A DNA stretch of 64,000 bases from the sequence record NC_070998.1, one strand, 5' to 3'. Below the pieces are notes generated by a model. The model made no database searches. It saw nothing but the letters and a program-made list of their open reading frames with translations, and was not told the DNA's origin. Shown piece by piece: positions 25,531 to 42,987 of this stretch. The translations under genes and the position numbers were made by a program. Numbering within the stretch: the stretch's first letter is position 1; every line of letters begins with the position of its first letter.

Positions 25531-26073
25531 ATGGAAAACATGCAATGGGTTTGTTACACAGATGGGAGTTGTCTTGACCAAAACAGTGGAACAGGAGGAA
25601 GTGGCGCGTGGGCATTTCATGCTATTTTTGGGGAATCGATAGTAGAGAAGTCTTGTGGGTACTTTAAGACTACTAATAATAGGATGGAGATATTAGCCAT
25701 TATCTCTTTCCTAGAGGAGTTTCAAGAACCCACTAAGGTTACTATACGAAGTGATTCCCAGTACACCATTGACGCTGTTACTAAATGGATTTACGGTTGG
25801 ATTAAGAATGACTGGGTAACATCTCAAGGACAACCTGTAAAGAACAAAGACTTATTTGAACGATTGTTTAAATTAGTAAAGTTCCATACAGTAAAATTTG
25901 AAAAAGTTAAAGCCCACTCAGGTATTGTTGGTAATGAACGTGCTGATGAATTAGCCAAGGAAGCAGCAGGAAATCCAACATTAGTTGATGAAGGTTATAT
26001 ACCTCCAGATCCTAATGAAGTTAAACCTGTGGTTATAAAGAAACCTTGGTGGTTGAAGTATAAAAAGAAATAA
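25531..26073 (+). CDS. rnhA: ribonuclease HI
   Basis: YTDGSC, TTNNRME, SDSQY, VKAHSG, GNERADELA; start chosen after SD gaggaaagg. Confidence 0.95.
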   Translation: MENMQWVCYTDGSCLDQNSGTGGSGAWAFHAIFGESIVEKSCGYFKTTNNRMEILAIISFLEEFQEPTKVTIRSDSQYTIDAVTKWIYGWIKNDWVTSQGQPVKNKDLFERLFKLVKFHTVKFEKVKAHSGIVGNERADELAKEAAGNPTLVDEGYIPPDPNEVKPVVIKKPWWLKYKKK

Positions 26074-26232
26074 AGTTCACCCAACTCAATAGAGTTGGGT
26101 GAACAATTCATAATAATTTATTTATTTTATATTACATTGACCGAATAAATGACATTGGTAGAACACGATCTTTTTTTTTCTATTACAACTTCAATAAATA
26201 TAGTCCCACCGAAGCGGGGGTAATGTAATTAC
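26068..26232 (+). repeat. left arm of ~165-bp inverted repeat (partner 42825..42987)
   Basis: Manual alignment ~85% identical to the reverse complement of 42825-42987; contains 30-bp palindrome, TATATTAC and UUCG/GAA hairpin. Confidence 0.92.
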
Positions 26233-26272
26233 GTCAATAAAGCACGTAAACCGGTTGAGATGGTTTGGTGAG

Positions 26273-28540
26273 TTAAGGTCTAACGACTGCGCTAGTAGAA
26301 ACCACACCATTTACAATAAAGTTAGCTAGTAAACTAATGGCTCCGTTGTTAATCACTTTCATAACTCCGTTGACTATTTCTAGCGTCAAGTGCCTTGCTA
26401 CCCCATATCCTGCTGCGCTATCTTGTAGAGTCACTAACGTGTTATTCAGGTTTGCGTCGTTAACACCTTGGTAAACGCACTTGTACCTACGCCAGCCCAT
26501 TTGGGACGGGCCTGAGGCGGAAAGCACGCCTATCACGTCAACAAAAAATACGCTGGCATTCGTGACAACTGTATAGATCGGTATAGTTACACTATCCCCA
26601 GCTGCTAGTGTAACTCCACCAATGTCTCTCATAGTGAATTGGTATTCATTTTTGTCTAAAACGCAATCAGTGAATCTTGTGTTTCTGTGTACGAATCTTT
26701 TTAGCGCCATCGTTGAGGACATAGGTGCATTGATCGAGCAATCTACGAAAGTTAAGTCCGAAGAACGGCTTCCATCGGATGCGATCACAGCGATTGGTTT
26801 GTTGAACTTCACACGCTCCGCTAGAAGCCCATGACAGTAATTTATCGCTGCTGAAAACGCACCCCCTCCGTTAATTTCACCATTTCTGAGTGTGATGTTT
26901 CGGTTATTGATCCCAGTGCCATTGTCACCAATAAGTAGCCCGCGTTGCGCCGATGATGTTACTTTGAAATTTTCAACTACCACGTTTTGACTAGCGTTTA
27001 TTTCTAACGTGTCACCATCGGTAGAGCCAACGTGATTTAAAATCTGAACGTTTTTACTTTCGGTTAGAGTAAACCCGATTGCTAACCCGTTGTAAGTCAG
27101 TCCAGTAAATTCGGTATTCGTAGCTACTACAGAATCACATCTGTATAAATGCCACCCGAAACCGTAGGTGTCCCTAACTATAATGTTATTTAGGTTAACC
27201 TTTCTGCAATTTTCAGTGGAACCGCCGCCCGCAAAAAAACCAGATGCGGCTATCCCACCATTAACGAAAGAGTAATTGTCTACACTTACTCTGTCACACG
27301 ATAAAAGATTTAAGCCGACTCTAAACCCATCTATCACATCCACGTTTTCAATTTCAACAGTAGACCACTGCAATGGGCCGCCAGCAGAGTTGCCATTCCC
27401 TAACCACACGCCACCTCCAGATAGATTACCTTTTGTAACAAAATCCTTATTCAAATCTAGTTTTGCGTTTTTTAAAGAGAATTTTTTACTCGATGTAGAG
27501 ACAGTATTATCAAAAAATAGCGGGTGAGTCTGCGAGACTAGCTCAATGGTGTTCAACTGCCCATCTAGTGAGAAATCATTAGCTGGAACTACCTGTCCAG
27601 ATTTGTAAGGTGTCTCCGATTTTTCTAATGTGAAATTTGACAGCTTAGCCCCATATGTTAACGCAGCTGCATTGTTTGTGCTCCCTGAGTCAACACCGAT
27701 TGATTTTGATGAGTTGATTATACCATCTTCATAAACTGCGGTATTTCCATTACCAGCGTCTAAGTACCATAACCCATTAACAGTGCCGCCAGATTGTATA
27801 TGAAATAATCCCAGTGCCTTATCAGTTAGTCTCACATACTGACCAACACCAAATTTACCTGTTGCTAACTCTGCAACCGTAGTGTATTGAGCATCAATAA
27901 AATCCTGAACGCTTCCACCATTTGCACCGGATGTGCCTACTTTCGCTGCGCCGTCCGAGGTTGCTAGTTCGTGCCTTAACAGCGCTCCACTCTTGTCAAC
28001 AAACCCGCCGCCAGTCGGATTCGTACCAGCGGCAACTACACCAGCAGGCCCGGAGAACGCCTTTCCAGTACGCTCTTGTAGTAACACATCGTTAACGTTT
28101 ACCAGCTCGGCACCTTGTTCAAAACTACCTTCAACAAGATCATATCCTGCTTCTTTATAAGTTCTACGAAGTGCTTCTCTTGCTATTACGCGTTCATCCC
28201 TGGTTACAACACCCCATCCTTTCTTACCACCTGGGGTAGGGGAACTATTAGCTGGTACTACATAAGGTAATTTACCGTTCCAACTGTACCAGTATCCATC
28301 CGTTGGGTAAAAGACACATTTATCCCGATCGCCGATACCTAAAGTTCCACCACTAACAAAGTCAAACCCTGCTGGTTTAAAACCCACATCTTTTAAAGCT
28401 TGTTGTACAGTCTTGTGTTGCTTACCAAAACGATCCTGCCACAAAGCAGCAGGTGAATTCATTGCATAGTCAAACGAGATAGCATTATCTTGAAGATCAA
28501 GTTGATCATCGCTTCCTATGGGGTTTTGCGTAAAGTGCAT
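26273..28540 (-). CDS. tailspike / receptor-binding protein A (beta-helix, putative polysaccharide depolymerase)
   Basis: NPIGSDD..DRFG anchor, Tail_spike_N-like modules, REALRRTY box, right-handed beta-helix repeats. Confidence 0.88.
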   Translation of the reverse strand: MHFTQNPIGSDDQLDLQDNAISFDYAMNSPAALWQDRFGKQHKTVQQALKDVGFKPAGFDFVSGGTLGIGDRDKCVFYPTDGYWYSWNGKLPYVVPANSSPTPGGKKGWGVVTRDERVIAREALRRTYKEAGYDLVEGSFEQGAELVNVNDVLLQERTGKAFSGPAGVVAAGTNPTGGGFVDKSGALLRHELATSDGAAKVGTSGANGGSVQDFIDAQYTTVAELATGKFGVGQYVRLTDKALGLFHIQSGGTVNGLWYLDAGNGNTAVYEDGIINSSKSIGVDSGSTNNAAALTYGAKLSNFTLEKSETPYKSGQVVPANDFSLDGQLNTIELVSQTHPLFFDNTVSTSSKKFSLKNAKLDLNKDFVTKGNLSGGGVWLGNGNSAGGPLQWSTVEIENVDVIDGFRVGLNLLSCDRVSVDNYSFVNGGIAASGFFAGGGSTENCRKVNLNNIIVRDTYGFGWHLYRCDSVVATNTEFTGLTYNGLAIGFTLTESKNVQILNHVGSTDGDTLEINASQNVVVENFKVTSSAQRGLLIGDNGTGINNRNITLRNGEINGGGAFSAAINYCHGLLAERVKFNKPIAVIASDGSRSSDLTFVDCSINAPMSSTMALKRFVHRNTRFTDCVLDKNEYQFTMRDIGGVTLAAGDSVTIPIYTVVTNASVFFVDVIGVLSASGPSQMGWRRYKCVYQGVNDANLNNTLVTLQDSAAGYGVARHLTLEIVNGVMKVINNGAISLLANFIVNGVVSTSAVVRP
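27995..28183 (-). repeat. conserved 189-bp tailspike junction box, copy A
   Basis: ~76% nt identical to 37212-37400 (manual count), first 27 nt identical. Confidence 0.9.
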
Positions 28541-28650
28541 ATTAACCTCTTTAATTAATAGGGTGGTGAAAGAAGACTTTTCTGCTTCTTAAAATCAGTT
28601 CATAACATCCCATAAAAGATTATCGGATTCTCTATTCTGTCAAATAAAAT

Positions 28651-28787: not shown

Positions 28788-29159
28788 ATGCGTTTTAAAC
28801 ATGAATCTTTAATGAAAGTAAAGAAAATTTTAATGACCCGTGTAAGTTATATTATTAACTTGCAAATTCGTAATGGTGAAAAAGCTGTTGATCTTTCAAC
28901 CAAGTACAATATAAACCCCACCACTATCTCTGAACTGAAACATCAGAAATTAGAAAAGATGAGTCTCGATCGATTGATCACTTGTGCCGATAAAATGGGA
29001 TTAGAATACTCCATTGGGATCACAAACTTTAATGGTTATAAAACTGTAGATATTTCTTTACCCAAATATGACAACGATCCTGTAATAAGGCAAATCGATA
29101 TGAAACGTCATCAGCACAAACATGATTCTAGCAACAAAGTAACAACTCGAGCGGTATAA
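28788..29159 (+). CDS. XRE-family (HigA-like) helix-turn-helix protein
   Basis: AVDLSTKYNINPTTISELKHQKLEKMSLDRLI pattern. Confidence 0.7.
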   Translation: MRFKHESLMKVKKILMTRVSYIINLQIRNGEKAVDLSTKYNINPTTISELKHQKLEKMSLDRLITCADKMGLEYSIGITNFNGYKTVDISLPKYDNDPVIRQIDMKRHQHKHDSSNKVTTRAV

Positions 29160-29163
29160 ATAG

Positions 29164-29469
29164 ATGATCAAAGAAATTCTGTCAAATAGTGAATGTGTAG
29201 AAAAGCAGTTGTTGAAAACCTTCCCTAATTTCAATCAAGAGTTTCCAGAGGAGTTACAACTCACTTTGATCAACATGATCAAACATGATGAAACAGTTAC
29301 CGTCTTCCCTAATACAGTGGAAGTTAAAAATAGCTCTTTCAAAGAGTTGGTAATTAAAATCTGTAAGGAGTGGATTATTTTTATCACTGAAGAGTTGAAT
29401 GACTATACTTGCTTTTACCGACAAACTAATTTGGATAAAATCAAATCTTTTATTAGTTTACACAGTTAA
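29164..29469 (+). CDS. hypothetical protein
   Basis: 101-aa ORF in early run. Confidence 0.65.
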   Translation: MIKEILSNSECVEKQLLKTFPNFNQEFPEELQLTLINMIKHDETVTVFPNTVEVKNSSFKELVIKICKEWIIFITEELNDYTCFYRQTNLDKIKSFISLHS

Positions 29470-29517
29470 TAAAGACTCTTGGTGAAATTATTAGCTAAAC
29501 ATCAGGAGGTTTGTTAA

Positions 29518-29616
29518 ATGAAATTAACAAAGCGTTCTGGATTGGTGATTGTAATTACAATCACCTTCTGGGTTATAACTGGGATAGTTGGTTACCAACT
29601 TTATCAACAAGGGTAA
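29518..29616 (+). CDS. 32-aa single-TM peptide (not in ORF track)
   Basis: Strong SD aggagg; MKLTKRSGLVIVITITFWVITGIVGYQLYQQG*. Confidence 0.65.
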   Translation: MKLTKRSGLVIVITITFWVITGIVGYQLYQQG

Positions 29617-29625
29617 GGGAACATT

Positions 29626-30981
29626 ATGTCTAAGAAAGCTAAAGAAGTTAAAGCGGTTAAAGTCGCTGAAACCAAAACTGTGGATGTGTTGGAAGACAAC
29701 GTACAAAACGAACAGGAAGAATCTGATACCCAAGATTCTTCCTGTGTTTTTTCTGCCTTAATTGAACCATCTTCACCACCTATTGTAGAACTGGAAAATG
29801 TCGAGGTTAAACCTAAGTACGTGTTGGATAACATAGCCAACAAACCAAAACTGAAAGTTGGTGATAAAGAAATTGAGCTTAAAGAAGTTCAACTGACCAG
29901 TGATCATTTCTTTAATATTAATAGTTTCCGTAGCTCCCCAAGACATTATCACTTTAGTAATCATTACAGTGAAAATGAAATGAGAAAGGTTGAAGGCGAA
30001 CCTAAGTGGTACGGCGCGGAAGTTAACGGAGTCCAATTCTTCCTGACCCAAGGTTCTGTTGTAGACCTTAAACGCCTAGATAACCAAACCGGTTATGGTG
30101 GACCCAACACCGATGGTCGTAAACCTTGTGTTAAGGTTACTTATTCTACTATCATTACTGATAACCTTTCCATTCGTGGATTTGAAGAGAATCGACTGTT
30201 TAATGTCGGATTAACTGGCGAGTGGATTTGCATTGATAATGTTTCTTTGTCAGATGGTAAAGTAGAAATTGAAAACTCCATAGATCTTACAAATGTGAGT
30301 CTAAGTGTTTTCAGCATTACTCGTACAAACTCTCTCGATCTTAACCAGTTTAACGGTAGTAGAATTTCGTTGAAAGGGTTTAATTCGATCAGAATTTACA
30401 ACAGTAGCTGCTACTGTCATTTTGAAAATTCTTTCATTCTTGATTTACCAAATAAGAAGATGGTCAATCTTTCCATTGGAAAGACCACTCTTAGTGATTT
30501 CAAGTTTATTAACTATAATCATAATCTTTGCGAGGGGTTAGATGTTAACTCCAAAATCGTTATAGATAAACGTATTGACTATGGTTATATCACTGGTCTG
30601 AAGCCTGTTCCTTTTGTGCGTGTTGGTCGCAGTGGGATCTTGGTAGGTAGTCAGTATTTTACCGCTGTAGAAATGTTGGGTAAAATCAATACAGCTACTC
30701 TGCACGAGATCACACCTATCTCTCCGTGGTATCCCACTCCTACCTTTGGTTCTCCAAGAGCTCTAGATCCATTGGTTGGGCGTGATGTTGCTGATAAAGC
30801 TTATAGCGTAGCTTTTAACTCTGGTTATAAAGGTAAGGTTCCTGAACATCAACCTGATCAACTTGTAGTAGATATTGTCCAAACCACAATTGACCAGATT
30901 CGTTCCAAAGTCAAGGTTTTTGCTTTGATTGACACTCTAATTTCTGGTTACTTTGAATATGACGATGAATACCCCTACTGA
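29626..30981 (+). CDS. hypothetical protein, acidic N-terminus and possible beta-solenoid core
   Basis: 451-aa ORF. Confidence 0.75.
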   Translation: MSKKAKEVKAVKVAETKTVDVLEDNVQNEQEESDTQDSSCVFSALIEPSSPPIVELENVEVKPKYVLDNIANKPKLKVGDKEIELKEVQLTSDHFFNINSFRSSPRHYHFSNHYSENEMRKVEGEPKWYGAEVNGVQFFLTQGSVVDLKRLDNQTGYGGPNTDGRKPCVKVTYSTIITDNLSIRGFEENRLFNVGLTGEWICIDNVSLSDGKVEIENSIDLTNVSLSVFSITRTNSLDLNQFNGSRISLKGFNSIRIYNSSCYCHFENSFILDLPNKKMVNLSIGKTTLSDFKFINYNHNLCEGLDVNSKIVIDKRIDYGYITGLKPVPFVRVGRSGILVGSQYFTAVEMLGKINTATLHEITPISPWYPTPTFGSPRALDPLVGRDVADKAYSVAFNSGYKGKVPEHQPDQLVVDIVQTTIDQIRSKVKVFALIDTLISGYFEYDDEYPY

Positions 30982-31666
30982 TACCTTAGAAAGACTAACT
31001 AGAAAATTTGGGAATCTGTTTCTCCATATTTCTGGTGAAAGTAAGGTTTCATTCTTAGGACTGAAAGGTAATTCTTGGAATGGGTTTATTACAACCTGTT
31101 TTGACGGAGACTTAGGTTGTATGGAACGGATTGAAGACGAAAGACCTTCCGCTCTAGACAACGCTTTTCGGTTCATGAGAGATTTAACCATAACACCTCA
31201 TTTGAACTTGGATGAGAACTCTAAGTATACACTTACGGAAGAAGAGTGGAATAGTGAACTCGATCAGTTTCTAAAGTTTATTGAAAGCAACCCGTTCAAT
31301 AAAACTTATCAACATTATGTTTACCATAAAGGTGAAACTAATAAGGTTGAAACTGTTATAACTATCCAACTTAAACCTCTCTGTAACACATATGTTGTTG
31401 GGGAGTATCATGCTAGTAATGAAGCTGAGTTTCTTGGGGAAGTAACCGCTGTTAATAGTGAGGATGGTTCTGATGCTCTAATTTTCTCATGTGATAAATT
31501 TGCTTTTCTATTGGAAACTACCAATGATAAACATCTTTACTCAAATGAGAATTGTATAAAGTACCGAGAACATATTCCTACGAAAGGTGATTTTCTTGTA
31601 CGAGATAATGGAACTGGTAAATTAGTTATCTTACCTAAAAATGATTACTGTGGATATTTCCACTAA
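30965..31666 (+). CDS. hypothetical protein
   Basis: ORF 30953..31666; start uncertain. Confidence 0.7.
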   Translation: MNTPTDTLERLTRKFGNLFLHISGESKVSFLGLKGNSWNGFITTCFDGDLGCMERIEDERPSALDNAFRFMRDLTITPHLNLDENSKYTLTEEEWNSELDQFLKFIESNPFNKTYQHYVYHKGETNKVETVITIQLKPLCNTYVVGEYHASNEAEFLGEVTAVNSEDGSDALIFSCDKFAFLLETTNDKHLYSNENCIKYREHIPTKGDFLVRDNGTGKLVILPKNDYCGYFH

Positions 31667-31671
31667 CATAA

Positions 31672-31699
31672 AGGGTAACTGGGAACACCCAGTTACCCT
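31672..31699. terminator. hairpin terminator
   Basis: agggtaactggg-aaca-cccagttaccct. Confidence 0.78.
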
Positions 31700-31712
31700 C
31701 ATTTTCTTATGC

Positions 31713-31739
31713 TCTATAATTTTTGAGATAGATATTATT
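31713..31739 (+). promoter_or_regulatory. early promoter motif
   Basis: tctataatttttgagata-GATATTAT (core 31731-31738). Confidence 0.6.
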
Positions 31740-31776
31740 ATTGTGTAAGTATAGGGAGTATAAAAGGAAAAGTAGC

Positions 31777-32544
31777 ATGTCTAATAAAAAGAAGCGTAAT
31801 GAAGCCAAGAACCAAAAGAAAAAGCAAGCAATTGCCAATCACAAACAGTTCTTTGCACATCGAGCCAAAGTGACACATATCACTCAATCGCTCAATCATG
31901 CATTGGGTAAGTTCTATGTCATTGGTGACAAGAATCACCTACCAATGACCTTTGGGCTGTGGGATCTTAAAAACAGGCTGAAGGGGGACGATCTAAAAAT
32001 AGGCTTGGAAGAAGCGATGAAGTTTCTTCTCGATACTCCAAATACTTGGGTAATTGCAATTTATCATTTCTTTGATATTGATGGTATTGTTGAGGTAATA
32101 CCAGTTACTTGCACAGTTCCAGATTTTACCTTAGGAATTGCTTGCGATTTAGTTCCGGCCTTAATAGAAGAGACTAAGGCTTGTATTCTTGAAAAGGAAG
32201 AGTACAAAGATTTAGAAAGTTATTATAGTCATCATGCTTATTATATCAATTATGGAGATGATCTTAATTTTGATAAAATGGATGGTGATTTAATTAACGC
32301 TATGTTCACAGTCAGTAATGACTTACAGAAGACTTCAGATATCGTTCCTGTTGTAAATGGCTATAAGGTATTGGACAACATTCTTAAAGATCCTGGAGAA
32401 GTTGCAGGAGGTTCAGAGAGTGTTCCGTTGTGTAGCAATATGGTAGAGTTAACAGAGGAAGTTTTAAATAGTTTTGGAATGACATCTACAGATATTGATG
32501 AAATGTTTTCTGAATCATCAGAAGGTCATTTGGAAGTTGCTTAA
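31777..32544 (+). CDS. hypothetical protein
   Basis: ORF 31741..32544; ATG at 31777 after SD aagga. Confidence 0.75.
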   Translation: MSNKKKRNEAKNQKKKQAIANHKQFFAHRAKVTHITQSLNHALGKFYVIGDKNHLPMTFGLWDLKNRLKGDDLKIGLEEAMKFLLDTPNTWVIAIYHFFDIDGIVEVIPVTCTVPDFTLGIACDLVPALIEETKACILEKEEYKDLESYYSHHAYYINYGDDLNFDKMDGDLINAMFTVSNDLQKTSDIVPVVNGYKVLDNILKDPGEVAGGSESVPLCSNMVELTEEVLNSFGMTSTDIDEMFSESSEGHLEVA

Positions 32545-32577
32545 TCAATTATTTTAGTCTAGATAAAGGAAAGTAAA

Positions 32578-32955
32578 ATGAAACAAGTGCATATTGAAAA
32601 ACTGGCAGATATTATCTCCAAAGAGAAGTCTGAATTCCGTATTAACATCCCGGCTCTTAATGGTAAAGGTGAATTTCGGCTAGGGGGTAGTACATTCCCT
32701 ACCGGGACCTTCGAGATCGTAGTCCATTATCACGGTAAAGAAGTTTCTTGTTCTGGACACATGGGTCGACAGTACATAACTATGACACAGGTTAAGAATG
32801 AAGAAATCGATAAGTCCAAACCTTGTTTGAAAATCAACATCACTCGTCGCAATGGTGCGTTTATTAAAAATGATCGATTCATTAAGAACGACGTAGCTAG
32901 TCTTATCGAGTTCTTTAATGACTGGACCGCAGAAGTTACTCTTGACAATAAATAG
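32578..32955 (+). CDS. hypothetical protein
   Basis: ORF with SD aagga. Confidence 0.7.
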   Translation: MKQVHIEKLADIISKEKSEFRINIPALNGKGEFRLGGSTFPTGTFEIVVHYHGKEVSCSGHMGRQYITMTQVKNEEIDKSKPCLKINITRRNGAFIKNDRFIKNDVASLIEFFNDWTAEVTLDNK

Positions 32956-32961
32956 GGATTC

Positions 32962-33357
32962 GTGATGAGTACCATATCTGCTAATGTCTTTAATAGGATT
33001 GTTGATTCTATCATTTCTGCCGGAGGAGTAGGTTTCTGGGTAGAAGACGACTTGCTTAGGAACTTGAAACAACGTAATCTACTACAGTTCTGGCAAACTA
33101 GTAATCATAGACCAGAGTTGTCTATTGAAAGTCCTAAGGCTAAACTGGAGTTTCGTTTAGTCAATCCGCGCAATCATGAATGGTCTTTCACTATTAGTTC
33201 TCAGACTGGAATGAGGAAGTCTGTAAGTTTAACCTGGATGGGGAATTTGTCTAATCCTAAAACTAATCACGAACAGGGCAAATTACTTAGAAGTGAGATA
33301 GGTTTAGTTTTAAGGCAATTCCTAGTCCAATCAGGAATTAAATTTATTCCAAATTGA
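32962..33357 (+). CDS. hypothetical protein
   Basis: ORF in coupled run. Confidence 0.7.
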   Translation: MMSTISANVFNRIVDSIISAGGVGFWVEDDLLRNLKQRNLLQFWQTSNHRPELSIESPKAKLEFRLVNPRNHEWSFTISSQTGMRKSVSLTWMGNLSNPKTNHEQGKLLRSEIGLVLRQFLVQSGIKFIPN

Positions 33358-34683: not shown

Positions 34684-34714
34684 TAACAACCTTAAGTCTA
34701 GATAAGGATATATC

Positions 34715-35730: not shown

Positions 35731-36120
35731 TTGATGGATAAGAAAATTATTGGTGACTTGAAGTGGGTTATTTCTGGGTTGGTTATTGCGTTTTTGTTTT
35801 ATCCAATGGCAATATCAAACTGGCGAAGTGCGACATCTGGTAAAATCTTGGAGTGTTACACTGAACAAACTGTCAATGGAAATGTTTACTACTGCGACTT
35901 CAAAATAAATAATGATGAAATTGTTACCATTAAACACCAAAGACAACTCTGGAATGAACATAAAGAACAAATTGGGACCATTGTGTCAGTTCATCCTGGT
36001 CAAACACCAAGATCTCTTGCCCCTTTATTTCTAGGGACAATTGGGATGTTATCAATGGTAGTTGGCGTTATATCAATCATCCAAAGAAAACTTAAAGTTA
36101 AAGATATTTACCAGATTTAA
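35731..36120 (+). CDS. membrane protein with two TM segments
   Basis: N- and C-terminal hydrophobic stretches. Confidence 0.65.
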   Translation: MMDKKIIGDLKWVISGLVIAFLFYPMAISNWRSATSGKILECYTEQTVNGNVYYCDFKINNDEIVTIKHQRQLWNEHKEQIGTIVSVHPGQTPRSLAPLFLGTIGMLSMVVGVISIIQRKLKVKDIYQI

Positions 36121-36128
36121 CTAAGATA

Positions 36129-36165
36129 TAACTCTCTACTCCCAATTAAAGGGAGTAGAGAGTTA
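36129..36165. terminator. hairpin terminator (same family as 15662)
   Basis: taactctctactccc-aattaaa-gggagtagagagtta. Confidence 0.82.
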
Positions 36166-36173
36166 CTTTAATA

Positions 36174-36200
36174 TCCATAAATTTATAGACCGATATTACT
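36174..36200 (+). promoter_or_regulatory. early promoter motif
   Basis: tccataaatttatagacc-GATATTAC (core 36192-36199). Confidence 0.6.
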
Positions 36201-36295
36201 AGAGTGTATAAACATGAATGATTTATCATTCACTTGTTTAAGATAAGAGATTCTTCAATCTCTTCAACCTTTAAGTATAGATAAGGAATATAATT

Positions 36296-36763
36296 ATGTT
36301 TACTGAATCTGAAAAACAAGCTTTCAAAAATAACCTTTCCTTGGTAACTTCCAATTCTTCTTTGGTTAAATTGGATGTGGTAAACGAAGAGGTTATGGAG
36401 AGACGTCACCTGCTAGTTGCTAAACGTAATCGCAAGCTAGAAGCTTTCTCCTCAGCTGTACTAGTTTACTTTTGTAACGTGTTGAACCAAAGGGGATACG
36501 CAGCTGGTAGTAAAGAACAGTTTAAATCCACTCTTGCGGTAGCTGACGTTTTAACCACCGGCTGGACAATTTATCACGCAAGTTGTGTGATCTCTGACGA
36601 CAAATATTCTACCATAGAACAAATGTCAACTTGGGTAGAGAAAAAGTTGAAAGAAGCTTTCTCATATGGACTGAATGATACAATGAGACCGACCGCGTAT
36701 TCCCTGAAATATATTCTCGACGACTTCGATCGTATTAATAAAATTTCTTCACTGGCCAAGTAG
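36296..36763 (+). CDS. hypothetical protein
   Basis: ORF with SD aagga. Confidence 0.7.
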   Translation: MFTESEKQAFKNNLSLVTSNSSLVKLDVVNEEVMERRHLLVAKRNRKLEAFSSAVLVYFCNVLNQRGYAAGSKEQFKSTLAVADVLTTGWTIYHASCVISDDKYSTIEQMSTWVEKKLKEAFSYGLNDTMRPTAYSLKYILDDFDRINKISSLAK

Positions 36764-36893: not shown

Positions 36894-39203
36894 ATGTCTA
36901 GCAATAAACCTTTCCCGTCGTCAGATCTTGACGTATTTAAAGAAAACAGTCTTATATTAGACAATTTTGTCAACAGTCAGGAAAACGAACATCCTGATCG
37001 TTTTGCAAGAAAAAGGCCAACTATTACAGGGATTATCAAAGAAGCTTTTAATGTCCGCACTGATATTTCCAATATGAATGAAACTCTTATTGGTCAAAGT
37101 CGTTGGGATGCTGTTCCCAAGAACACTAGCTTAGCCCTAGGTGGGGATAATGGTGCTTTGAACAAACAAGCACAAGCTTTATTTAACCGAACCGAATTGT
37201 TGAAAACCCATGCAAGAGAAGCACTTCGTAGAACTTATTTAGAAGCTGGTTTAAATCTTGTTGAAGGTAGTTTTGAGGCTGGCGGTACTCTCGTAAAGGC
37301 TAATGACGTGTTGCTGCAAGAGCGCACCGGCAGGGTGTTCTCTGGTCCTGTCGGTGTAGTTGCCGCGGGGACTGACCCAGCGAGCGGTGAGTTTGTTGAT
37401 AGAAGTTCAGTACTTCTAAGAGATATGTCGCAGAAAATATTCAGTACTACCGCGGCCGTGATATCAGCGGCAGCAACATTGAAAATCGGCGATTTAGTCA
37501 GCACAGCAGGTCACACTACGGTCGGGGTCGGGGCGGCAGATTACGTGGTCTCTACAGACATCGCCCGCCCTTTCTTGGACATTAGCTTGGGGGATGGACG
37601 GATAGCCAAAATGCTTATCAAGGAATACATAGACCCAGCTTCTTGTGGTGTTGATACAACTGGTGTTCAGCCGGCCTCGCTGGCGCTTGCTGAAATTTCA
37701 AAGCATGGTTCTATCTCGTGGATTGGTTCGCTTTATATAGACCAAGAGTTCATTTTCGCAGCAGGCAATGACCTGATAGGGCAAGGCCAGCATAAATCGA
37801 AGTTGTTATTCAAGAATTCCGGTGTTGGCAAGGGTATCGTCAAGTCTACCAGGAGCCGATTCTATAACTTTGGTGTTACGTTAAAGGATTTTTTGGCTCC
37901 ATTCGATGGGCAGATGATCACGGTATCAGTGCAGTATGATTACTATATCTACGGCACAGTCCCACGTGAATCAACTGGATATGACCGGCTGGTGTTGGAT
38001 CACAGTAGTGATATTTATGCTGTCTCAACAGGTGGAACCAGCCCAAGCGGGGCATCAACAGGCCGCTTCTTGGTGCTGGATACAGGTGATATTAATGGCA
38101 TCCCAATCCCCCCGCTAGCAACTCAGCTTGGTATTTACAAATCCCGGTTTGATAACTGCACTGCTATTGGTTTCTATTGTCCATTGACTTTGTTGAGCCG
38201 TACTGATCGCGCTAATCAAGGTGCTCCTTGGATGCACTCCAACCGATTCGCTGGTTGGGTTACAAAAAACAACGTGGTCGAGTTTGAGGCATTGATTCAG
38301 ACGGTTACACCGAGAGCCGGGTCATTCACTGATAACAAGATAGAAGATTGGGTAACTCAGCCATACAAGAACTCTCAGCGCATCGCCACCATGGAAGGGG
38401 CTGGGTTCAAATTCGTGGACTGTTTCTTCTGGGATCAACACCTCTACCCAGACCAGAGCAAACTGATTGTACTGAGGAAATCAGCCACAGGGGACACAAA
38501 TTGGATTGAAAGAAATTCTTTCTACAATGACCACAGACCATCACTGGAATTTGTGCGCTGTCCAATCACCAGAAATAAGATTTCTGTCGAGAATATGACG
38601 ACAAATCTATGGCCTGCTGTCATCAAAATCACCGATAAATTTGGCAATGGAGATTGTGTCGGTGATATACCCATACTTAGTAACATTACAACAGGGACCA
38701 ATATATCGAGGTTCATGGCTGTTAACTTCACTACACCGCAGACGGTCGGTGCTGTAGCGCAGTGTACATTCAAAATTAAATCAAAATGGCCGTTAGCTAC
38801 CGACCCATTCCGGGGGGCCATCTACGCCATTGACATTGCTATCAACGTCAAGTTGACTGCTACGGGGTTTGAAGTGAAAACGCACTTGCTAACACCTTAC
38901 ACAGGAATCAAAACAGGTATTGATATCTATGCAGATAACCCCCGCCTCGTTAACGGCGAGTACATGTTAGATATTGTTGCATCTCAGAACAGTGTGGCAG
39001 CGCCTTTCCCGTCAATACGACTCAATGACAGCCCTTTACAGAACGGGGACTGGCAGTTATCTAATTCATACGGTATCATTTTGCCTATTCCGTCTGGCCA
39101 TGGGGCAACGACACTATCTGACGCTGCGGTGAAGATAGTGGACACGTTAGATCTGATTGCAGCGAATACAGTCATATCAAAGACAACCGCAATCAGCATA
39201 TAG
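36894..39203 (+). CDS. tailspike / receptor-binding protein B
   Basis: PFPSSD..DRFA anchor, REALRRTY box, GC-richer beta-helical C-terminal region; ATG 36894 after SD gagga. Confidence 0.85.
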   Translation: MSSNKPFPSSDLDVFKENSLILDNFVNSQENEHPDRFARKRPTITGIIKEAFNVRTDISNMNETLIGQSRWDAVPKNTSLALGGDNGALNKQAQALFNRTELLKTHAREALRRTYLEAGLNLVEGSFEAGGTLVKANDVLLQERTGRVFSGPVGVVAAGTDPASGEFVDRSSVLLRDMSQKIFSTTAAVISAAATLKIGDLVSTAGHTTVGVGAADYVVSTDIARPFLDISLGDGRIAKMLIKEYIDPASCGVDTTGVQPASLALAEISKHGSISWIGSLYIDQEFIFAAGNDLIGQGQHKSKLLFKNSGVGKGIVKSTRSRFYNFGVTLKDFLAPFDGQMITVSVQYDYYIYGTVPRESTGYDRLVLDHSSDIYAVSTGGTSPSGASTGRFLVLDTGDINGIPIPPLATQLGIYKSRFDNCTAIGFYCPLTLLSRTDRANQGAPWMHSNRFAGWVTKNNVVEFEALIQTVTPRAGSFTDNKIEDWVTQPYKNSQRIATMEGAGFKFVDCFFWDQHLYPDQSKLIVLRKSATGDTNWIERNSFYNDHRPSLEFVRCPITRNKISVENMTTNLWPAVIKITDKFGNGDCVGDIPILSNITTGTNISRFMAVNFTTPQTVGAVAQCTFKIKSKWPLATDPFRGAIYAIDIAINVKLTATGFEVKTHLLTPYTGIKTGIDIYADNPRLVNGEYMLDIVASQNSVAAPFPSIRLNDSPLQNGDWQLSNSYGIILPIPSGHGATTLSDAAVKIVDTLDLIAANTVISKTTAISI
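37212..37400 (+). repeat. conserved 189-bp tailspike junction box, copy B
   Basis: AREALRRTY...FVD coding box shared by tailspikes A, B and C. Confidence 0.9.
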
Positions 39204-39241: not shown

Positions 39242-39508
39242 TCCATTTTGCAGTATTCCATTACTAAGTCCTGTACATCGATTTACCCTCAACCAGACTT
39301 CCTGTCTCACCTGATCAAATGCGTCCTCAGTCTGTATCTGGGACACGAACACGGGGCGCGAATCCCCAACATGTGGATGTTGTATTGGATCTAATCAATT
39401 GATGTACATTTCATAAATGTACACGTTGTAGTTTGCTCGACATCCATGCAATAATTACTATAGAAAATGAGCAAACATATTTGTAAACTAGATTAAAACA
39501 ATTAATTT

Positions 39509-39542
39509 AAACTCTACTTACTCACTAGGAGTAAGTAGAGTT
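39509..39542. terminator. hairpin terminator (resident family)
   Basis: aactctacttactc-actag-gagtaagtagagtt. Confidence 0.78.
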
Positions 39543-39589
39543 ATTTTATTGATTTTATGACCTTAGAAATTAAACCAAGGAATAAGTGT

Positions 39590-39985
39590 ATGACTCATAA
39601 CACTGGTAATGAACTTGAATCTTCAGATATCTTGGATTTTTCAGATAACTGTGAGAACTTAGATGTTTTAATGAATGCTGATCAAGACTATTGGACTACA
39701 AGACTTGGTGATAAGAAACCGACAGTTGATTACGCTTTGCGTATGGCTGGATTCGCCCCTGCTGGATTTGATTTCACCACAGGTGGTGTTTTAAAGAATG
39801 GTGATCGGAATAAGTGTGTATTTAACCAAGCTGATCAAACTTGGTATAGTTGGTCAGGCGACCTTCCTTATAATGTAATTGCTGGAAGTACACCTGGGGA
39901 AGGTTGGAAAGTTCAGGTTTCTCCCTCCATTGTTACTAAATTACAAGAATTGGAAACTAGGATTCTTGCTTTGGAAAATAAATAA
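39590..39985 (+). CDS. anchor-only tailspike-like protein with C-terminal coiled coil (131 aa)
   Basis: N-terminus homologous to tailspikes A and C (GFAPAGFDFTTGG...WYSWSG) but ends KLQELETRILALENK*. Confidence 0.8.
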   Translation: MTHNTGNELESSDILDFSDNCENLDVLMNADQDYWTTRLGDKKPTVDYALRMAGFAPAGFDFTTGGVLKNGDRNKCVFNQADQTWYSWSGDLPYNVIAGSTPGEGWKVQVSPSIVTKLQELETRILALENK

Positions 39986-40386
39986 TGACTTTACAAGATT
40001 TCATTTCTCACTATCAATACAAACCTGATCCAATTAAGAAAGACATTTGGATTATTCCTAACAAAGTTAACAATCAATATCTTGATGATTGCGATGGTTT
40101 CTGTTTAGGAGTGTTGTTCTATGTTCTTGCTAATAGTTCACTTCTTACTTTCTGGTATTTGTTACTGTTCACAGACACTAGAATCTATTACGTGGTGACT
40201 AGTAACAACATTGGTCACGTCGTACTTCGACATGAAGATCAATACATTGACACTTATTCAAAAGCTTGGGTGAGTAAAGAACAGATGTTGTCTTATGGAC
40301 ATAAGTTCCATTGGTCTAAAATGTTCTTTTTCTGGCAAGTTGCTTTGAAAATGTTAATTGGTAAGATCTTAGTTAAAATGAAATAG
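39985..40386 (+). CDS. putative transglutaminase-like cysteine peptidase
   Basis: DDCDGF (Cys), GHVVL (His), YIDT (Asp) putative triad. Confidence 0.55.
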   Translation: MTLQDFISHYQYKPDPIKKDIWIIPNKVNNQYLDDCDGFCLGVLFYVLANSSLLTFWYLLLFTDTRIYYVVTSNNIGHVVLRHEDQYIDTYSKAWVSKEQMLSYGHKFHWSKMFFFWQVALKMLIGKILVKMK

Positions 40387-40480: not shown

Positions 40481-42619
40481 ATGTCAAGATTTAATACTGG
40501 GAACAATATCCCGTCGATATCAGAAGAAGATTTTTATGATAACTCCATGGCTTTAGATGAAGCTATGAATAGCACTGATCCTACATGGAGAGATCGGTTT
40601 AATGTTGAGAAACCTACGATCGACGCAGCTTTGAAATCCGCAGGATTTATGCCGGCGGCATTTGACTTTGTAACTGGTGGCACTCTTCAACCTGGAGATC
40701 GCAATAAAGCTGTTTATAATCCGGCACCTAACGGCGATAATAACTGGTATCGCTGGAATGGTGTATTTCCGAAGGAAATTGCTGCTAATAGTCAGCCTAA
40801 TCCCAAAGATGAAAATAATTGGGTATTGGCACATTTTAGAATTGGAATAGTCGAAAAGGAAGCACTTCGTAGAACATATTTGGAAGCAGGTTATAATCTT
40901 GTTAACGGTAGCTTTGAACAAGGTGGGACGTTAGTAAATAGTAATGATGTGCTGCTGCAAGAGCGCACAGGGAAAGTATTCACCGGTCCTGCGGGTATAG
41001 TTGCCGCCGGAACGAATCCGGCGAGCGGCGGGTTTGTTGATGTGTCGCCATTCGTATTGAAGACTGAGCCGCCACTGATAGCAAAAACAGGTTCATTCTC
41101 ATCTGGTGGGCGTGCGGAATCTATGAAATCTGCGCTTCTTTCTTCAGACGGTTACTACTACACACCGAGAACTGGTGTTATCACAGCGGCTCCAGGATCA
41201 TCTCCTAATTCTATGTGGGTCTGTGTGGGTCTGCTTAACGGAGCGCCCATAGACGACATGCTAAACTGGCTTGATGGTCGCCCGCATCTAAATGCTTTCA
41301 TTGCTGCTCGCGACAGCAAGTCAATTCGTGGCGGCGGGGTGGTCACTTTCCCTGCTGGCGATTACACGTTTGCTGATGAATTCGTGTGCGTAGATTACGT
41401 CAAGTTTGTGGGTGAAGATCGTAGCAAGTGTCGCATATTTGGTGCAGCGGGTTCAGGAGCGGGAAAGGCTGTAGTGAGAGCTTGCAAGTCGCCTGTCGGT
41501 TCTGCTGACATACCGGAATATCTATCTTATTCGGGGTTTAGTAACTGCACAATTAACGGCAACGCAACTTGGGATGTTGGCCTTTACGTTCGCCACTGTA
41601 CAAACGAATCTGTTTTCGATAACGTTACAGCGCAGAACTGTAAAAAGGCTAACTCAATTTTTATCGGCGTCTTTTATGTTAGTGCCAAAAATCACGTAAG
41701 CCGAGACGCACGTGACTTGGGTGCTGTCATCGGTAAGAAGATTTTCAGCGAAGGCGGGCTTCGTGAGGTTAATGCTTCAGCTTTCAATAACCTCAGAGGC
41801 AATTACGCAGGACTTGACGACGCCTATGATCCGACCACAAACCCATATGCAGGTGCCTGCATAACAATATGGACCGCTAACAGTTGCGCATTTGATTATG
41901 TTGGTGCCGAGAATGCTTACGGTGCTGGTGCTATTATCCGCAAAGGGATAAACAGCACAATCCCGAACTTGTATGTCGAGTCCAATGGGAAGGGCACTGC
42001 TGCTGTGGATAAGATCGGAGCCAGGATCATTGCTGCAGATTTCCCTTCACTGATCATTGGTTCCCTCTTTGCAACAAGACAGCAGAAGATTTATCTGGAG
42101 GGGAGCTCACTGCTGCAAGTTGGCGAAATCTACTCTGAGTCTTTTGCAAATGGAATTTTCATGGGCACAGGCAAAGTGCTGTTGATGAATGGCCACAGCG
42201 CCAATAATTACATTGGGGCAGATCAAGCATTCATTAATAACATTGAAACTAAACGCATTGCTCAGTTTGGGAATGTCCCTTTCACCAACTTCGCGAGCCT
42301 AGACTCCACAGCTGTTATTTTTGGCGAGGCAATGACAAATGTCCAAGTGGTGATGGTGCCTAGAGTAACTTTAACCACGGCAGACCCGATAGTCATTGGG
42401 CTGTCAAATTCTCTATCCGGGGGGCAAGTGCTAGAATTTGGGACATCGTTTACTGCGGGAGTGCCTATTACCAAAACGTTCAGCAAAGTTTCTAAAGGTG
42501 CTGGAAGACTTACTCACCGGTCAAATTACCTGCCATCTACAACAACAAACTTTGCAATGGACGTGTTCATTATTCAGTACGTTTGTGATTACCAGGCTAT
42601 TTATAACAAGTGGTTTTAA
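40481..42619 (+). CDS. tailspike / receptor-binding protein C (pectate-lyase-like beta-helix)
   Basis: TGNNIPS..DRFN anchor, EALRRTY box, GGGVVTFPAGDY beta-helix entry motif. Confidence 0.88.
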   Translation: MSRFNTGNNIPSISEEDFYDNSMALDEAMNSTDPTWRDRFNVEKPTIDAALKSAGFMPAAFDFVTGGTLQPGDRNKAVYNPAPNGDNNWYRWNGVFPKEIAANSQPNPKDENNWVLAHFRIGIVEKEALRRTYLEAGYNLVNGSFEQGGTLVNSNDVLLQERTGKVFTGPAGIVAAGTNPASGGFVDVSPFVLKTEPPLIAKTGSFSSGGRAESMKSALLSSDGYYYTPRTGVITAAPGSSPNSMWVCVGLLNGAPIDDMLNWLDGRPHLNAFIAARDSKSIRGGGVVTFPAGDYTFADEFVCVDYVKFVGEDRSKCRIFGAAGSGAGKAVVRACKSPVGSADIPEYLSYSGFSNCTINGNATWDVGLYVRHCTNESVFDNVTAQNCKKANSIFIGVFYVSAKNHVSRDARDLGAVIGKKIFSEGGLREVNASAFNNLRGNYAGLDDAYDPTTNPYAGACITIWTANSCAFDYVGAENAYGAGAIIRKGINSTIPNLYVESNGKGTAAVDKIGARIIAADFPSLIIGSLFATRQQKIYLEGSSLLQVGEIYSESFANGIFMGTGKVLLMNGHSANNYIGADQAFINNIETKRIAQFGNVPFTNFASLDSTAVIFGEAMTNVQVVMVPRVTLTTADPIVIGLSNSLSGGQVLEFGTSFTAGVPITKTFSKVSKGAGRLTHRSNYLPSTTTNFAMDVFIIQYVCDYQAIYNKWF
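40853..41041 (+). repeat. conserved 189-bp tailspike junction box, copy C
   Basis: EKEALRRTY...FVD box aligned gap-free to copies A and B. Confidence 0.9.
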
Positions 42620-42622
42620 GCC

Positions 42623-42646
42623 AAAGCCCCTCAATCGAGGGGCTTT
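42623..42646 (+). terminator. short GC-rich terminator of donor type
   Basis: aaagcccctc-aatc-gaggggcttt. Confidence 0.8.
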
Positions 42647-42824
42647 CCTTTCACCGTCGTATCAATGAGTCTTTATTTGCACTCGTCCTGGTTGAACCAA
42701 CCCGGTAGGTCACGCAAGACGTTAATATTCTTGATACTGGCCCAGCCATGTAAACCACGATATCCTTGTTCTCACCAGGAATAGCCCAGATAAACAGAGC
42801 GCCGATAATGGCTCCGGTTTTTGA

Positions 42825-42987
42825 GTAAATACATTGCCCCCGCTTCGGCGGGTTTGTATTTATTGAAGTTGTAATAGAATGTACGATCGTGTTCTACTTG
42901 TCTCGCTTATTCTGTCAATGTAATATACAATAAATATATTATTCTGAATTGTTCACCCAACTCAATAGAGTTGGGTGAACTTTATTT
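42825..42987 (-). repeat. right arm of ~165-bp inverted repeat (partner 26068..26232)
   Basis: See left arm; includes cccgc-ttcg-gcggg hairpin and the 30-bp palindrome at 42951-42980. Confidence 0.92.

What the first reader, a model, noticed from the sequence alone, without database searches (positions are those of the whole stretch)
26068..42987. Tailspike island built as nested homology cassettes: candidate receptor-binding-domain shuffling system
Seen: ~165-bp inverted repeats (26068-26232 and 42825-42987, ~85% identical by manual alignment) bracket a 17-kb island. Tailspike A (minus strand) and C (plus strand) both end towards these arms. All three tailspikes carry a gap-free 189-bp box (27995-28183 minus, 37212-37400, 40853-41041; A vs B ~76%, first 27 nt identical) at the border between anchor and unrelated receptor-binding domain (RBD). 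So the RBDs of A and C are each flanked by homology on both sides. Inference: crossover between the inverted boxes would flip the middle ~9-13 kb and exchange anchors; double crossover or gene conversion would swap RBDs; crossover between the direct boxes B and C would delete RBD-B, the stub and the peptidase. No invertase is in the window, so this would use general recombination (RuvC and SbcC are encoded nearby). Tail-fibre shufflons (Mu, P1) use invertases; I do not recognise an invertase-free nested-repeat design in a phiKZ-like phage.
Basis: partly seen in the sequence, partly recalled or inferred. Interest (0 to 1): 0.85.

Follow-up and report, generated by a model that had tools for sequence, protein, structure and literature searches.

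The report
Modular tailspike locus, not a shufflon
The repeats are real, but they are a conserved tailspike protein domain and a duplicated terminator region in an Aeromonas jumbo phage whose receptor-binding modules are swapped between phages over evolutionary time, as in other multi-tailspike phages, not a dedicated in-genome shuffling switch.

Summary
The window is Aeromonas phage PS1 (Ferozepurvirus, 237 kb). The inverted arms are 84% identical over 179 nt and the three boxes are 75-80% identical.

The box encodes a small N-terminal tailspike domain that sits just before the beta-helix. It occurs in tailspikes of 54 phage records, and unrelated phages match it as well (74-78% nt) as PS1's own copies match each other. 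Inside PS1 its synonymous sites are near saturation (dS 0.8-1.0).

Each arm is a pair of intrinsic terminators between convergent genes. The arms group by side, not by genome. Only PS1 and PS2 have both.

Five isolates and two metagenome contigs keep the same orientation. Anchors are locus-specific, and no receptor-binding domain (RBD) appears at two loci.

RBDs have nonetheless been replaced between near-identical relatives, and RBD-C is shared with small phages of the same host strain.

So RBD exchange happens between phages by ordinary homologous recombination. This is a known design, described for Ackermannviridae and T-even fibres. A self-contained shuffling system is not supported.

Residual oddities are a genus-specific 24-27-nt invariant at the box start and a 3' core shared with unrelated phages.

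The parts
25468..26073 (+). RNase H gene (annotated start 25531), left neighbour of the island. Its 3' two-thirds already lie inside the PS1/PS2 divergent patch.
   Evidence: Pfam RNase_H E 9e-41. PS1 vs PS2 are identical up to 25631 and 91-95% identical after that.
26062..26240 (.). Arm L, a convergent-terminator cassette. Hairpin 1 (26075-26104, perfect 13-bp stem) lies directly after the RNase H stop. Hairpin 2 (26205-26218) lies nearer TSP-A.
   Evidence: Inverted repeat with arm R. Both hairpins score as intrinsic terminators on the minus strand, which is the TSP-A direction. No Rfam family matches.
26273..27994 (-). TSP-A receptor-binding part (beta-helix). Unique to PS1 among 50,697 phage records.
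   Evidence: Pfam Beta_helix E 1e-5. tblastn finds no relative over more than 16% of its length. PS2 has an unrelated RBD here.
27995..28183 (-). Box A, the second Tail_spike_N-type (TD-like) domain of TSP-A, residues about 120-183.
   Evidence: The box profile hits N-terminal domains of solved tailspikes. hhalign of the first-domain segment against the box profile gives E 3e-5.
28184..28540 (-). TSP-A anchor (locus-specific N-terminus with the PF18668 segment).
   Evidence: Pfam Tail_spike_N. PDB 9occ gp13 E 1e-10 over residues 4-110. A-anchors of relatives are 66-90% identical, against 35-55% to other loci.
28788..36763 (+). Middle block: an HTH regulator (28788-29159), an HD-type phosphohydrolase (35062-35730) and small genes of unknown function. 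It is syntenic in the sister genus, which has no TSP-A and no arms.
   Evidence: PHROGs. CF8 and ZPAH34 synteny.
36894..39203 (+). TSP-B: its own distinct anchor (residues 1-107), box B at 37212-37400, then the RBD. Identical in PS2.
39492..39558 (.). A copy of a dispersed terminator hairpin family, upstream of the stub.
   Evidence: Palindrome. The same family has 10 places in AVP1, 7 in ACP1 and 4 in PS1.
39557..39985 (+). Stub: the fourth tailspike (locus D) with its whole middle deleted. It keeps the anchor and the last ~15 codons, and has no box.
   Evidence: 81-91% identical to D-anchors of ACP1, AVP1 and pAEv1810, which are 753-957 aa. Its C-terminal end aligns with theirs. Pfam Tail_spike_N E 6e-8.
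39985..40386 (+). 133-aa ORF of unknown function, start overlapping the stub's stop. Conserved between loci D and C in all five genomes.
   Evidence: No Pfam or PHROG hit.
40481..42619 (+). TSP-C: anchor, box C (40853-41041), then the RBD (41081-42616), which is shared with unrelated small phages of the same host strain.
   Evidence: The RBD is 66.5% identical to a 45-kb phage and 47% identical to the T7-like Ahp1/CF7 group, all on A. hydrophila ATCC 7966.
42651..42716 (.). 3' core: an unannotated stretch after the TSP-C terminator hairpin (about 42623-42646). It is also found downstream of tailspike genes in PS2 locus A, ACP1 locus C, phiA005 and phiA047.
   Evidence: alignment A9.
42818..42993 (.). 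Arm R: hairpin 2 at 42839-42852 and hairpin 1 at 42951-42980, directly after the stop of the 1052-aa gene.
   Evidence: Both hairpins score as terminators on the plus strand, which is the TSP-C direction.
42986..46144 (-). 1052-aa gene of unknown function, right neighbour of the island. Conserved and convergent in all relatives and in the sister genus.
   Evidence: No Pfam, PHROG or PDB hit.

Best explanation
This is the receptor-binding locus of a phage that carries several tailspikes at once. Locus A is on the minus strand. Loci B, D and C are on the plus strand.

Each gene is built from a locus-specific N-terminal anchor, usually a second small Tail_spike_N-type domain (the 'box'), and a variable beta-helix RBD.

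The boxes look alike because they encode a conserved structural domain that is shared across many phage groups.

The arms are two old copies of a double-terminator region between convergent genes. They probably date from the event that placed TSP-A, inverted, behind the RNase H gene.

Variation arises when related or unrelated co-infecting phages recombine through conserved 5' modules and whatever 3' flank they share. That replaces an RBD, sometimes with hitch-hiking donor DNA, or deletes one, as at locus D in PS1 and PS2.

Shown: the anatomy, the distribution of each element, and the replaced RBDs. Inferred: that homologous recombination at the box was the route. The locus is not a programmed switch, and there is no sign that it currently rearranges within a genome.
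For: - Identity of the window: it is PS1, 100% match.
- The box is a protein domain. Its profile hits the N-terminal domains of solved tailspikes: 8x8m at E 3e-7, and CBA120 TSP3 residues 99-145 at E 5e-4. It is related to the PF18668 segment of the anchor. It is found in 54 phage records, including E. coli Ackermannviridae TSP3 at 77% aa identity.
- Box identity inside PS1 is 75-78% nt. Identity to unrelated phages is 74-78% nt. Within PS1, dS is 0.83-0.97 and dN is 0.14-0.17.
- The arms are terminator pairs. L-L identity is 89-93.5%, R-R is 91-100%, and L-R is 84-86%, or 89% for PS2's left arm.
- Arm distribution: both arms only in PS1 and PS2, left arm only in pAEv1810, right arm only in ACP1, none in AVP1.
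- The sister genus has the same block with all tailspikes on the plus strand and no TSP-A.
- RBD replacement: locus A between PS1 and PS2, loci C and D between ACP1 and AVP1. RBD-C is shared with unrelated phages of the same host. The 3' core is shared with phiA005 and phiA047.
- The stub is an internally deleted locus D.
- The same design and the same kinds of events are described for Ackermannviridae (PMC11414711).
Against: - The first 8 box codons are nearly invariant at synonymous sites across loci A-D within the genus (mean pS 0.26, against 0.60 for the next 16 codons). Phages outside the genus use other codons there. That hints at homogenisation between paralogues, or at a nucleotide-level site, which plain protein constraint does not explain.
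- The arms (85%) and boxes (75-80%) are far more alike than the A and C anchors (58% nt). The box-to-arm segment may therefore have moved between loci A and C after the genes duplicated.
- No reads were available, so rare rearrangements within a lysate cannot be excluded.
- Only five isolates and two partial metagenome contigs were compared.
Confidence: 0.75

Rival explanations
1. The nested inverted and direct repeats form a working invertase-free shuffling system. General recombination within one genome flips the island, swaps RBD-A and RBD-C, or deletes RBD-B, often enough to matter for the phage.
For: - The geometry allows it.
- The phage encodes a RuvC-like resolvase and SbcC.
- The 24-27-nt genus-specific invariant sits at the box start.
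- Box subtypes are not tied to a locus. For example, the AVP1 locus C box resembles the ACP1 locus B box at 82% nt with a 36-nt identical tract.
- PS2 locus A and the C loci share the 3' core.
- Recombination between paralogous tsp genes has been seen in Ackermannviridae (PMC11414711).
Against: - dS between PS1 boxes is near saturation.
- There are no significant conversion tracts (p 0.085-0.22).
- The longest perfect matches are only 27, 17 and 17 nt in the boxes and 23 nt in the arms.
- The arms are absent from most relatives.
- Orientation and anchor pairing are invariant.
- An A/C swap gives no new specificity, because all the RBDs are separately encoded.
Confidence: 0.07
2. Pure relic. 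The boxes are conserved only because the protein needs them, and the arms only because terminators are needed. Neither plays any part in recombination, and RBD replacements occur by illegitimate joining or through homology elsewhere.
For: - The PS1/PS2 exchange ends in the RNase H gene and near 29500, not at a box or an arm.
- Several RBD junctions lie at residue ~108-112, before the box. This is seen in ACP1_D vs AVP1_D, in ACP1_A and AVP1_A, in the metagenome A genes and in the stub.
Against: - Many junctions do fall in or just after the box: PS1_A vs PS2_A at residue ~190, and C-locus orthologues at ~187.
- The near-identical B genes of ACP1 and AVP1 differ most within the box.
- The box has mosaic subtypes.
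- The box start is homogenised within the genus.
Confidence: 0.12
3. Homing-endonuclease-assisted exchange. Free-standing HNH genes next to the tailspike 5' ends cut a relative's genome during co-infection, and repair copies the neighbouring tailspike module. The genus-specific invariant at the box start could be such a target.
For: - HNH or HNH-like ORFs abut the tailspike 5' ends in PS2 (before C, and a 339-aa ORF before A), in AVP1 (before B) and in pAEv1810 (before A).
- PS1_C vs PS2_C mismatches fall off with distance from the PS2 HNH insertion: 13, 5, 9, 3, 6, 1, 0 per 60 nt.
Against: - No cleavage site is known.
- The invariant lies about 370 nt inside the genes, not at the insertion points.
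- The 339-aa ORF has no HNH hit.
- PS1 itself has no HNH gene inside the island.
Confidence: 0.1
4. The arms are terminal inverted repeats of a 17-kb mobile island.
For: Inverted repeats bracket the region.
Against: - No transposase or integrase is annotated.
- The island's contents sit at the same place in the sister genus without arms.
- The arms are terminator pairs, and they occur singly in ACP1 and pAEv1810.
Confidence: 0.01

Closest known systems
Ackermannviridae tail spike (tsp1-4) gene cluster and branched TSP complex (CBA120, S117, Det7, AV101; PMC11414711, PMC8432352, PMC11721090)
   Same: - Up to four tailspike genes at one locus, all encoded and displayed together.
- Conserved N-terminal domains of the Tail_spike_N (TD) type. 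The PS1 box profile hits CBA120 TSP1, TSP3 and TSP4.
- Unrelated beta-helix RBDs that are swapped among relatives and with unrelated phages.
- Conserved 5' ends proposed as the recombination sites.
- Recombination between paralogues and deletion or truncation of tsp genes have been observed.
   Different: - One PS1 gene is inverted and lies 8 kb away from the others, behind a block of small non-structural genes.
- No gp10-like XD domains were detected.
- The host phage is an unrelated 237-kb jumbo phage.
- A duplicated terminator cassette flanks the outer genes.
[quoted passage not shown] 1998, listed as ref. 24 in PMC11414711)
   Same: Short conserved motifs flank variable receptor-binding segments. 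General recombination between phages produces mosaics. No site-specific recombinase is involved.
   Different: The proteins are fibres, not tailspikes, and no homology was tested. The motifs lie within one gene rather than in several paralogous genes.
Klebsiella phage multi-depolymerase RBP systems (anchor/branching domain plus swapped depolymerase; PMC6872550)
   Same: A conserved N-terminal anchor, a variable enzymatic RBD, and several RBPs per virion.
   Different: The anchor families are different. No inverted gene or flanking repeat has been described there.
Invertase shufflons of tail fibres (Mu Gin/G segment, P1 Cin/C segment)
   Same: Inverted repeats lie near the tail-fibre or tailspike 3' parts, and the biological target is host recognition.
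   Different: There is no recombinase and there are no short crossover sites. There is no shared constant 5' exon and no silent alternative. Both orientations are never seen.

Membership tests
Invertase-driven tail-fibre shufflon (Mu G, P1 C, R64-type) | Site-specific recombinase (Gin/Cin/Rci-type) encoded beside the invertible segment | tested here: not met
   No such gene is annotated anywhere in the 64-kb window. Pfam on the flanking ORFs gives RNase H and HNH only. Not every small ORF was scanned.
Invertase-driven tail-fibre shufflon (Mu G, P1 C, R64-type) | One constant 5' gene part and promoter, joined alternately to two or more silent 3' parts | tested here: not met
   A, B, stub and C each have their own start codon, their own locus-specific anchor and their own upstream hairpin. 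The stub and C also share an upstream motif.
Invertase-driven tail-fibre shufflon (Mu G, P1 C, R64-type) | Both orientations found in populations or among relatives | tested here: not met
   The orientation is the same in five isolates and two metagenome contigs. Read-level data were not available.
Multi-tailspike (branched) RBP cluster of the Ackermannviridae kind | Several tailspike genes at one locus with beta-helix RBDs | tested here: met
   There are three full genes plus a stub in PS1 and four full genes in ACP1, AVP1 and pAEv1810. Pfam gives Beta_helix in A and a weak pectate-lyase-like hit in C.
Multi-tailspike (branched) RBP cluster of the Ackermannviridae kind | Conserved N-terminal Tail_spike_N / tandem (TD) domains | tested here: met
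   PF18668 is found in A, the stub and C. The box profile hits CBA120 TSP3 (E 5e-4), TSP1 and TSP4, and 8x8m at E 3e-7. The anchor segment against the box profile gives E 3e-5 in hhalign.
Multi-tailspike (branched) RBP cluster of the Ackermannviridae kind | gp10-like XD branching domains in two of the tailspikes | tested here: inconclusive
   TSP-B has no Pfam or PDB hit. No fold prediction was run.
Multi-tailspike (branched) RBP cluster of the Ackermannviridae kind | RBDs exchanged among relatives while the 5' ends stay conserved | tested here: met
Multi-tailspike (branched) RBP cluster of the Ackermannviridae kind | All tailspikes assembled into one complex on the virion | not testable with these tools
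   This needs virion proteomics or cryo-EM.
Transposon-like island with terminal inverted repeats | Transposase, target-site duplication, and absence of the island from relatives | tested here: not met
   No transposase is annotated. The island's contents are syntenic in CF8 and ZPAH34 without arms.

The most novel reading that the evidence does not exclude
Within Ferozepurvirus, the 24-27 nt at the 5' edge of the box are kept identical at synonymous sites across all four paralogous loci. Together with the 3' core found behind tailspike genes of unrelated Aeromonas phages, they might act as dedicated cassette-exchange sites. The HNH endonucleases that sit next to the tailspike genes might target them. 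RBD exchange would then be directed rather than accidental.
Probability: 0.1. Interest if true: 0.6.

Novelty: new member of a known kind. Interest (0 to 1): 0.3.

Why it matters
The finding extends the 'conserved N-terminus, swappable RBD, several spikes per virion' design from Ackermannviridae and Klebsiella phages to an unrelated Aeromonas jumbo-phage genus.

It also gives clean natural examples. One is an RBD replacement inside a 3.9-kb patch between two otherwise identical phages. Another is an emptied fourth locus. A third is an RBD shared with small phages of the same host strain.

This helps in reading host specificity from sequence. It does not reveal a new recombination mechanism.

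Tried and rejected
- Rfam on 25000-44000 at E<=1 gave nothing, so the arms are not a known RNA.
- Small-ORF readings of the arms were not conserved between left and right (by eye).
- The exact degenerate pattern of the box start gave 0 hits in IMG/VR. The C-anchor search of IMG/VR found no relatives.
- The RBD-A searches for PS1 and PS2 found no close relative, so no donor could be named.
- PDB sequence searches with TSP-B, TSP-C and the 1052-aa protein gave no hits.
- The 16-nt motif upstream of the stub and C occurs only at those two places, so it is not shown to be a general late promoter.
- DGR-type variation was considered. No reverse transcriptase is annotated, and the repeats are coding domains that differ at all base types. 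It was not pursued.
- A TIR-bounded mobile island was rejected (see rivals).
- No structure prediction was run. Alignments containing relatives from the phage collection are not accepted by that tool, and the fold would not decide the question.
- Technical: loci L002-L005 never appeared in the Python sandbox. Their pieces were brought in through alignment files instead.
- One call failed because the query contained a stop. It was repeated on the piece before the stop.
- Slip to report: in my private reasoning I wrote two short protein strings from memory, one I believed to be the lambda Rz1 spanin and one a Phd/YefM-like snippet.
Full report
Identity and observation

The window is Aeromonas phage PS1 (MN032614.2 / NC_070998.1, 237,367 bp, genus Ferozepurvirus). 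Window position equals record position minus 124,000.

- The arms 26062-26240 and 42818-42993 are inverted repeats, 84.4% identical over 179 nt (E 2e-48).
- The three boxes are gap-free. A-B is 76.6% identical, A-C 79.7% and B-C 78.1%.
- A and B share a perfect 27-mer at the start of the box.
- TSP-A (minus strand) and TSP-C (plus strand) do end towards the arms.
- The RefSeq annotation shows a RuvC-like resolvase and SbcC in the window, and no invertase.

What the box is

The box codes for residues about 120-185 of each tailspike, starting with the motif REALRRTY.

A profile built from 16 box copies matches the N-terminal domains of solved tailspikes. The matches are 8x8m at E 3e-7, CBA120 TSP3 (6nw9/5w6f, residues 99-145) at E 5e-4, and weaker hits to TSP1 and TSP4.

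hhalign relates the box to the PF18668 Tail_spike_N segment that lies earlier in the same PS1 proteins (E 3e-5, probability 72%). The N-terminus therefore appears to hold two copies of one small domain, and the box is the copy next to the beta-helix.

tblastn finds the box in 54 phage records. These include unrelated Aeromonas phages of 32-145 kb, E. coli Ackermannviridae 'tail spike 3' at 77% aa identity, and Pectobacterium phages. At the nucleotide level those foreign copies match PS1 box B at 74-78%. PS1's own copies match one another at the same level.

Within PS1, dS between boxes is 0.83-0.97 and dN is 0.14-0.17. A GENECONV-style permutation test finds no significant shared tracts between PS1 paralogues (p 0.085-0.22 before correction).

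The likeness of the boxes is therefore explained by purifying selection on a widespread domain, not by recent homogenisation.

What the arms are

Read from the flanking gene towards the tailspike, each arm has three features.
- A perfect 13-bp hairpin lies directly after the stop codon of RNase H (left arm) or of the 1052-aa gene (right arm).
- About 100 nt of A+T-rich sequence follow.
- A second G+C-rich hairpin comes last.

Read in the tailspike's direction, both hairpins score as intrinsic terminators. No Rfam family matches.

Across genomes the arms group by side. L-L identity is 89-93.5% and R-R is 91-100%. L-R is 84-86%, or 89% for PS2's left arm. The duplication is therefore older than the sampled genus, and the copies are not being homogenised.

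Only PS1 and PS2 have both arms. pAEv1810 has the left arm only, ACP1 has the right arm only, and AVP1 has neither.

AVP1 uses a different hairpin at both ends of its island. That hairpin belongs to a dispersed terminator family with 10 places in AVP1, 7 in ACP1 and 4 in PS1, including window 39492-39558.

Comparative test of shuffling

All five isolates keep TSP-A on the minus strand after RNase H, and B, D and C on the plus strand before the 1052-aa gene. Two metagenome contigs also keep TSP-A (minus) next to the HTH gene (plus).

An all-against-all comparison of 22 tailspike ORFs shows the following.
- Homology is confined to the first 110-290 residues.
- Anchors cluster strictly by locus. 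A-A is 66-90% identical, B-B 58-87%, C-C 60-87% and D-D 81-99%. Between loci the figure is 35-55%.
- No RBD occurs at two loci.

In the sister genus (CF8, ZPAH34) the same block runs from the HTH gene through the small genes to the tailspikes and then the convergent large gene. All its tailspikes are on the plus strand, and there is no TSP-A behind RNase H. TSP-A and arm L were therefore added once, in inverted orientation, in the Ferozepurvirus lineage.

Evidence that RBDs are exchanged

PS1 and PS2 are 100% identical up to 25631 and again from about 29500. In between they are 82-97% identical wherever they can be aligned. Their RBD-A sequences are unrelated, while residues 1-192 of TSP-A are 90% identical. 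The ends of this exchange lie in the RNase H gene and near 29500, not at an arm or a box.

ACP1 and AVP1 share RBD-A (98.8%) and RBD-B (95.8%), but their RBD-D and RBD-C are unrelated.

RBD-C of PS1 is 66.5% identical over 512 residues to a 45-kb phage. It is 47% identical to the T7-like Ahp1/CF7 group. All of these were isolated on the same host strain, ATCC 7966.

Junctions fall at two places: after residue ~108-112, which is the end of the anchor, and in or just after the box.

The PS1/PS2 'stub' is locus D with its middle deleted. It keeps the anchor and the last ~15 codons, and these align with the C-termini of the 753-957-aa D proteins of relatives.

Hints of something more

1. The first eight box codons are almost invariant at synonymous sites across loci A-D within the genus. 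Mean pS is 0.26, against 0.60 for the next 16 codons. phiA005, phiA047 and CF8 encode the same residues with other codons.
2. Box subtypes are not tied to a locus. Two near-identical B genes (ACP1 and AVP1) differ most inside the box.
3. The arms (85%) and boxes (75-80%) are far more alike than the A and C anchors (58% nt). PS2 locus A also shares the extra 3' core with the C loci.
4. That ~66-75-nt core lies behind tailspike genes in the unrelated phages phiA005 and phiA047 as well.
5. HNH genes abut several tailspike 5' ends. PS1_C vs PS2_C mismatches decline with distance from the PS2 HNH insertion.

These points fit a long history of recombination in a shared pool of tailspike modules. They leave a small chance that the junctions are more than passive homology.

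Why it is not a shufflon

Mu and P1 switch between silent alternatives that are joined to one constant 5' part. Here every RBD has its own anchor and start codon. All four genes have an upstream hairpin, and the stub and C share an upstream motif.

An A/C exchange would therefore only trade the positions of RBDs that are already encoded. A B/C crossover would only lose genes.

The perfect matches available are also short: 27, 17 and 17 nt in the boxes and 23 nt in the arms.

Comparison with the known

The design matches the Ackermannviridae tsp cluster. That literature proposes the conserved 5' ends and TD/XD domains as recombination sites. It documents RBD swapping among relatives and with unrelated phages. 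It also reports recombination between paralogous tsp genes, and deletion or truncation of tsp genes (PMC11414711; PMC8432352 and PMC6872550).

The T-even fibre locus is the classical precedent for invertase-free swapping between conserved motifs. It is cited as reference 24 in PMC11414711.

The differences here are the inverted, separated TSP-A, the duplicated terminator cassette, and the jumbo-phage background.

Verdict

Exchange of RBDs through conserved flanks is real at the evolutionary scale. A self-contained nested-cassette shuffling system is not supported.

This is a new member of a known kind, with interest 0.3.

Disclosure: in my private reasoning I wrote two short protein strings from memory, one I believed to be lambda Rz1 and one a Phd/YefM-like snippet.

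Noticed in passing
window 42651-42716 (also L002 ~3290-3370, L006 ~160-235, L014 4001-4087, L015 4001-4078): An unannotated core of about 66-75 nt lies just downstream of tailspike genes. It is conserved in PS1 locus C, PS2 locus A and ACP1 locus C. It is also conserved in the unrelated Aeromonas phages phiA005 (next to Rz/Rz1-like ORFs) and phiA047. Small opposite-strand ORFs of 33-35 aa and 39-40 aa recur there. It could be hitch-hiking donor DNA or a small gene that travels with tailspikes.
   Followed up: partly
window 39557-39985: The 'stub' is the fourth tailspike (locus D) with an internal deletion. Only the anchor and the last ~15 codons remain. The overlap of its stop with the start of the next gene is kept, as in AVP1.
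   Followed up: yes
window 25632 to ~29500: PS1 and PS2 are identical outside this 3.9-kb patch and 82-97% identical, or unrelated, inside it. The patch covers the RNase H 3' part, arm L, TSP-A, the HTH gene and the next gene. PS2 also carries an extra 339-aa ORF here.
   Followed up: yes
L002 18378-19424 and 5497-6516; L004 15361-16377; L005 6123-7139; window 23966-25477: HNH or HNH-like free-standing ORFs sit next to tailspike 5' ends in relatives. PS1_C vs PS2_C differences are concentrated in the first ~300 nt beside the PS2 HNH insertion, which looks like a co-conversion gradient.
   Followed up: partly
window 28704-28748, 31703-31747; also 19251-19278, 46333-46362, 55311-55381, 61087-61124: This is a dispersed promoter-like repeat family. 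The copy upstream of the HTH gene is almost invariant across PS1, PS2, pAEv1810, ACP1 and the metagenome contigs. It marks the exact point where contig L011 loses synteny.
   Followed up: partly
L011 5404-9827 (metagenome contig OEQX01000114.1): In this relative the HTH block is preceded by a jumbo-phage major head protein gene (GC about 50% against 36% around it) and a DnaB-like helicase, not by RNase H and TSP-A. This is either a different genome order or an assembly chimera.
   Followed up: partly
window 39492-39558; L004 6107-6138, 23620-23655, 24511-24542: A second terminator hairpin family is scattered through these genomes. In AVP1 it sits at both ends of the island, and as a direct repeat around two small inserted ORFs.
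   Followed up: partly
L005 3231-3650 and 3912-6008; L005 19474-20589 and 20589-21512: In pAEv1810 the A and C tailspikes are each annotated as two adjacent ORFs. They may be split genes or sequencing frameshifts. This was not examined.
   Followed up: no
window 4081-4118, 15662-15693, 50435-50462, 54593-54622: Further perfect palindromes of 28-38 nt, probably terminators.
   Followed up: no
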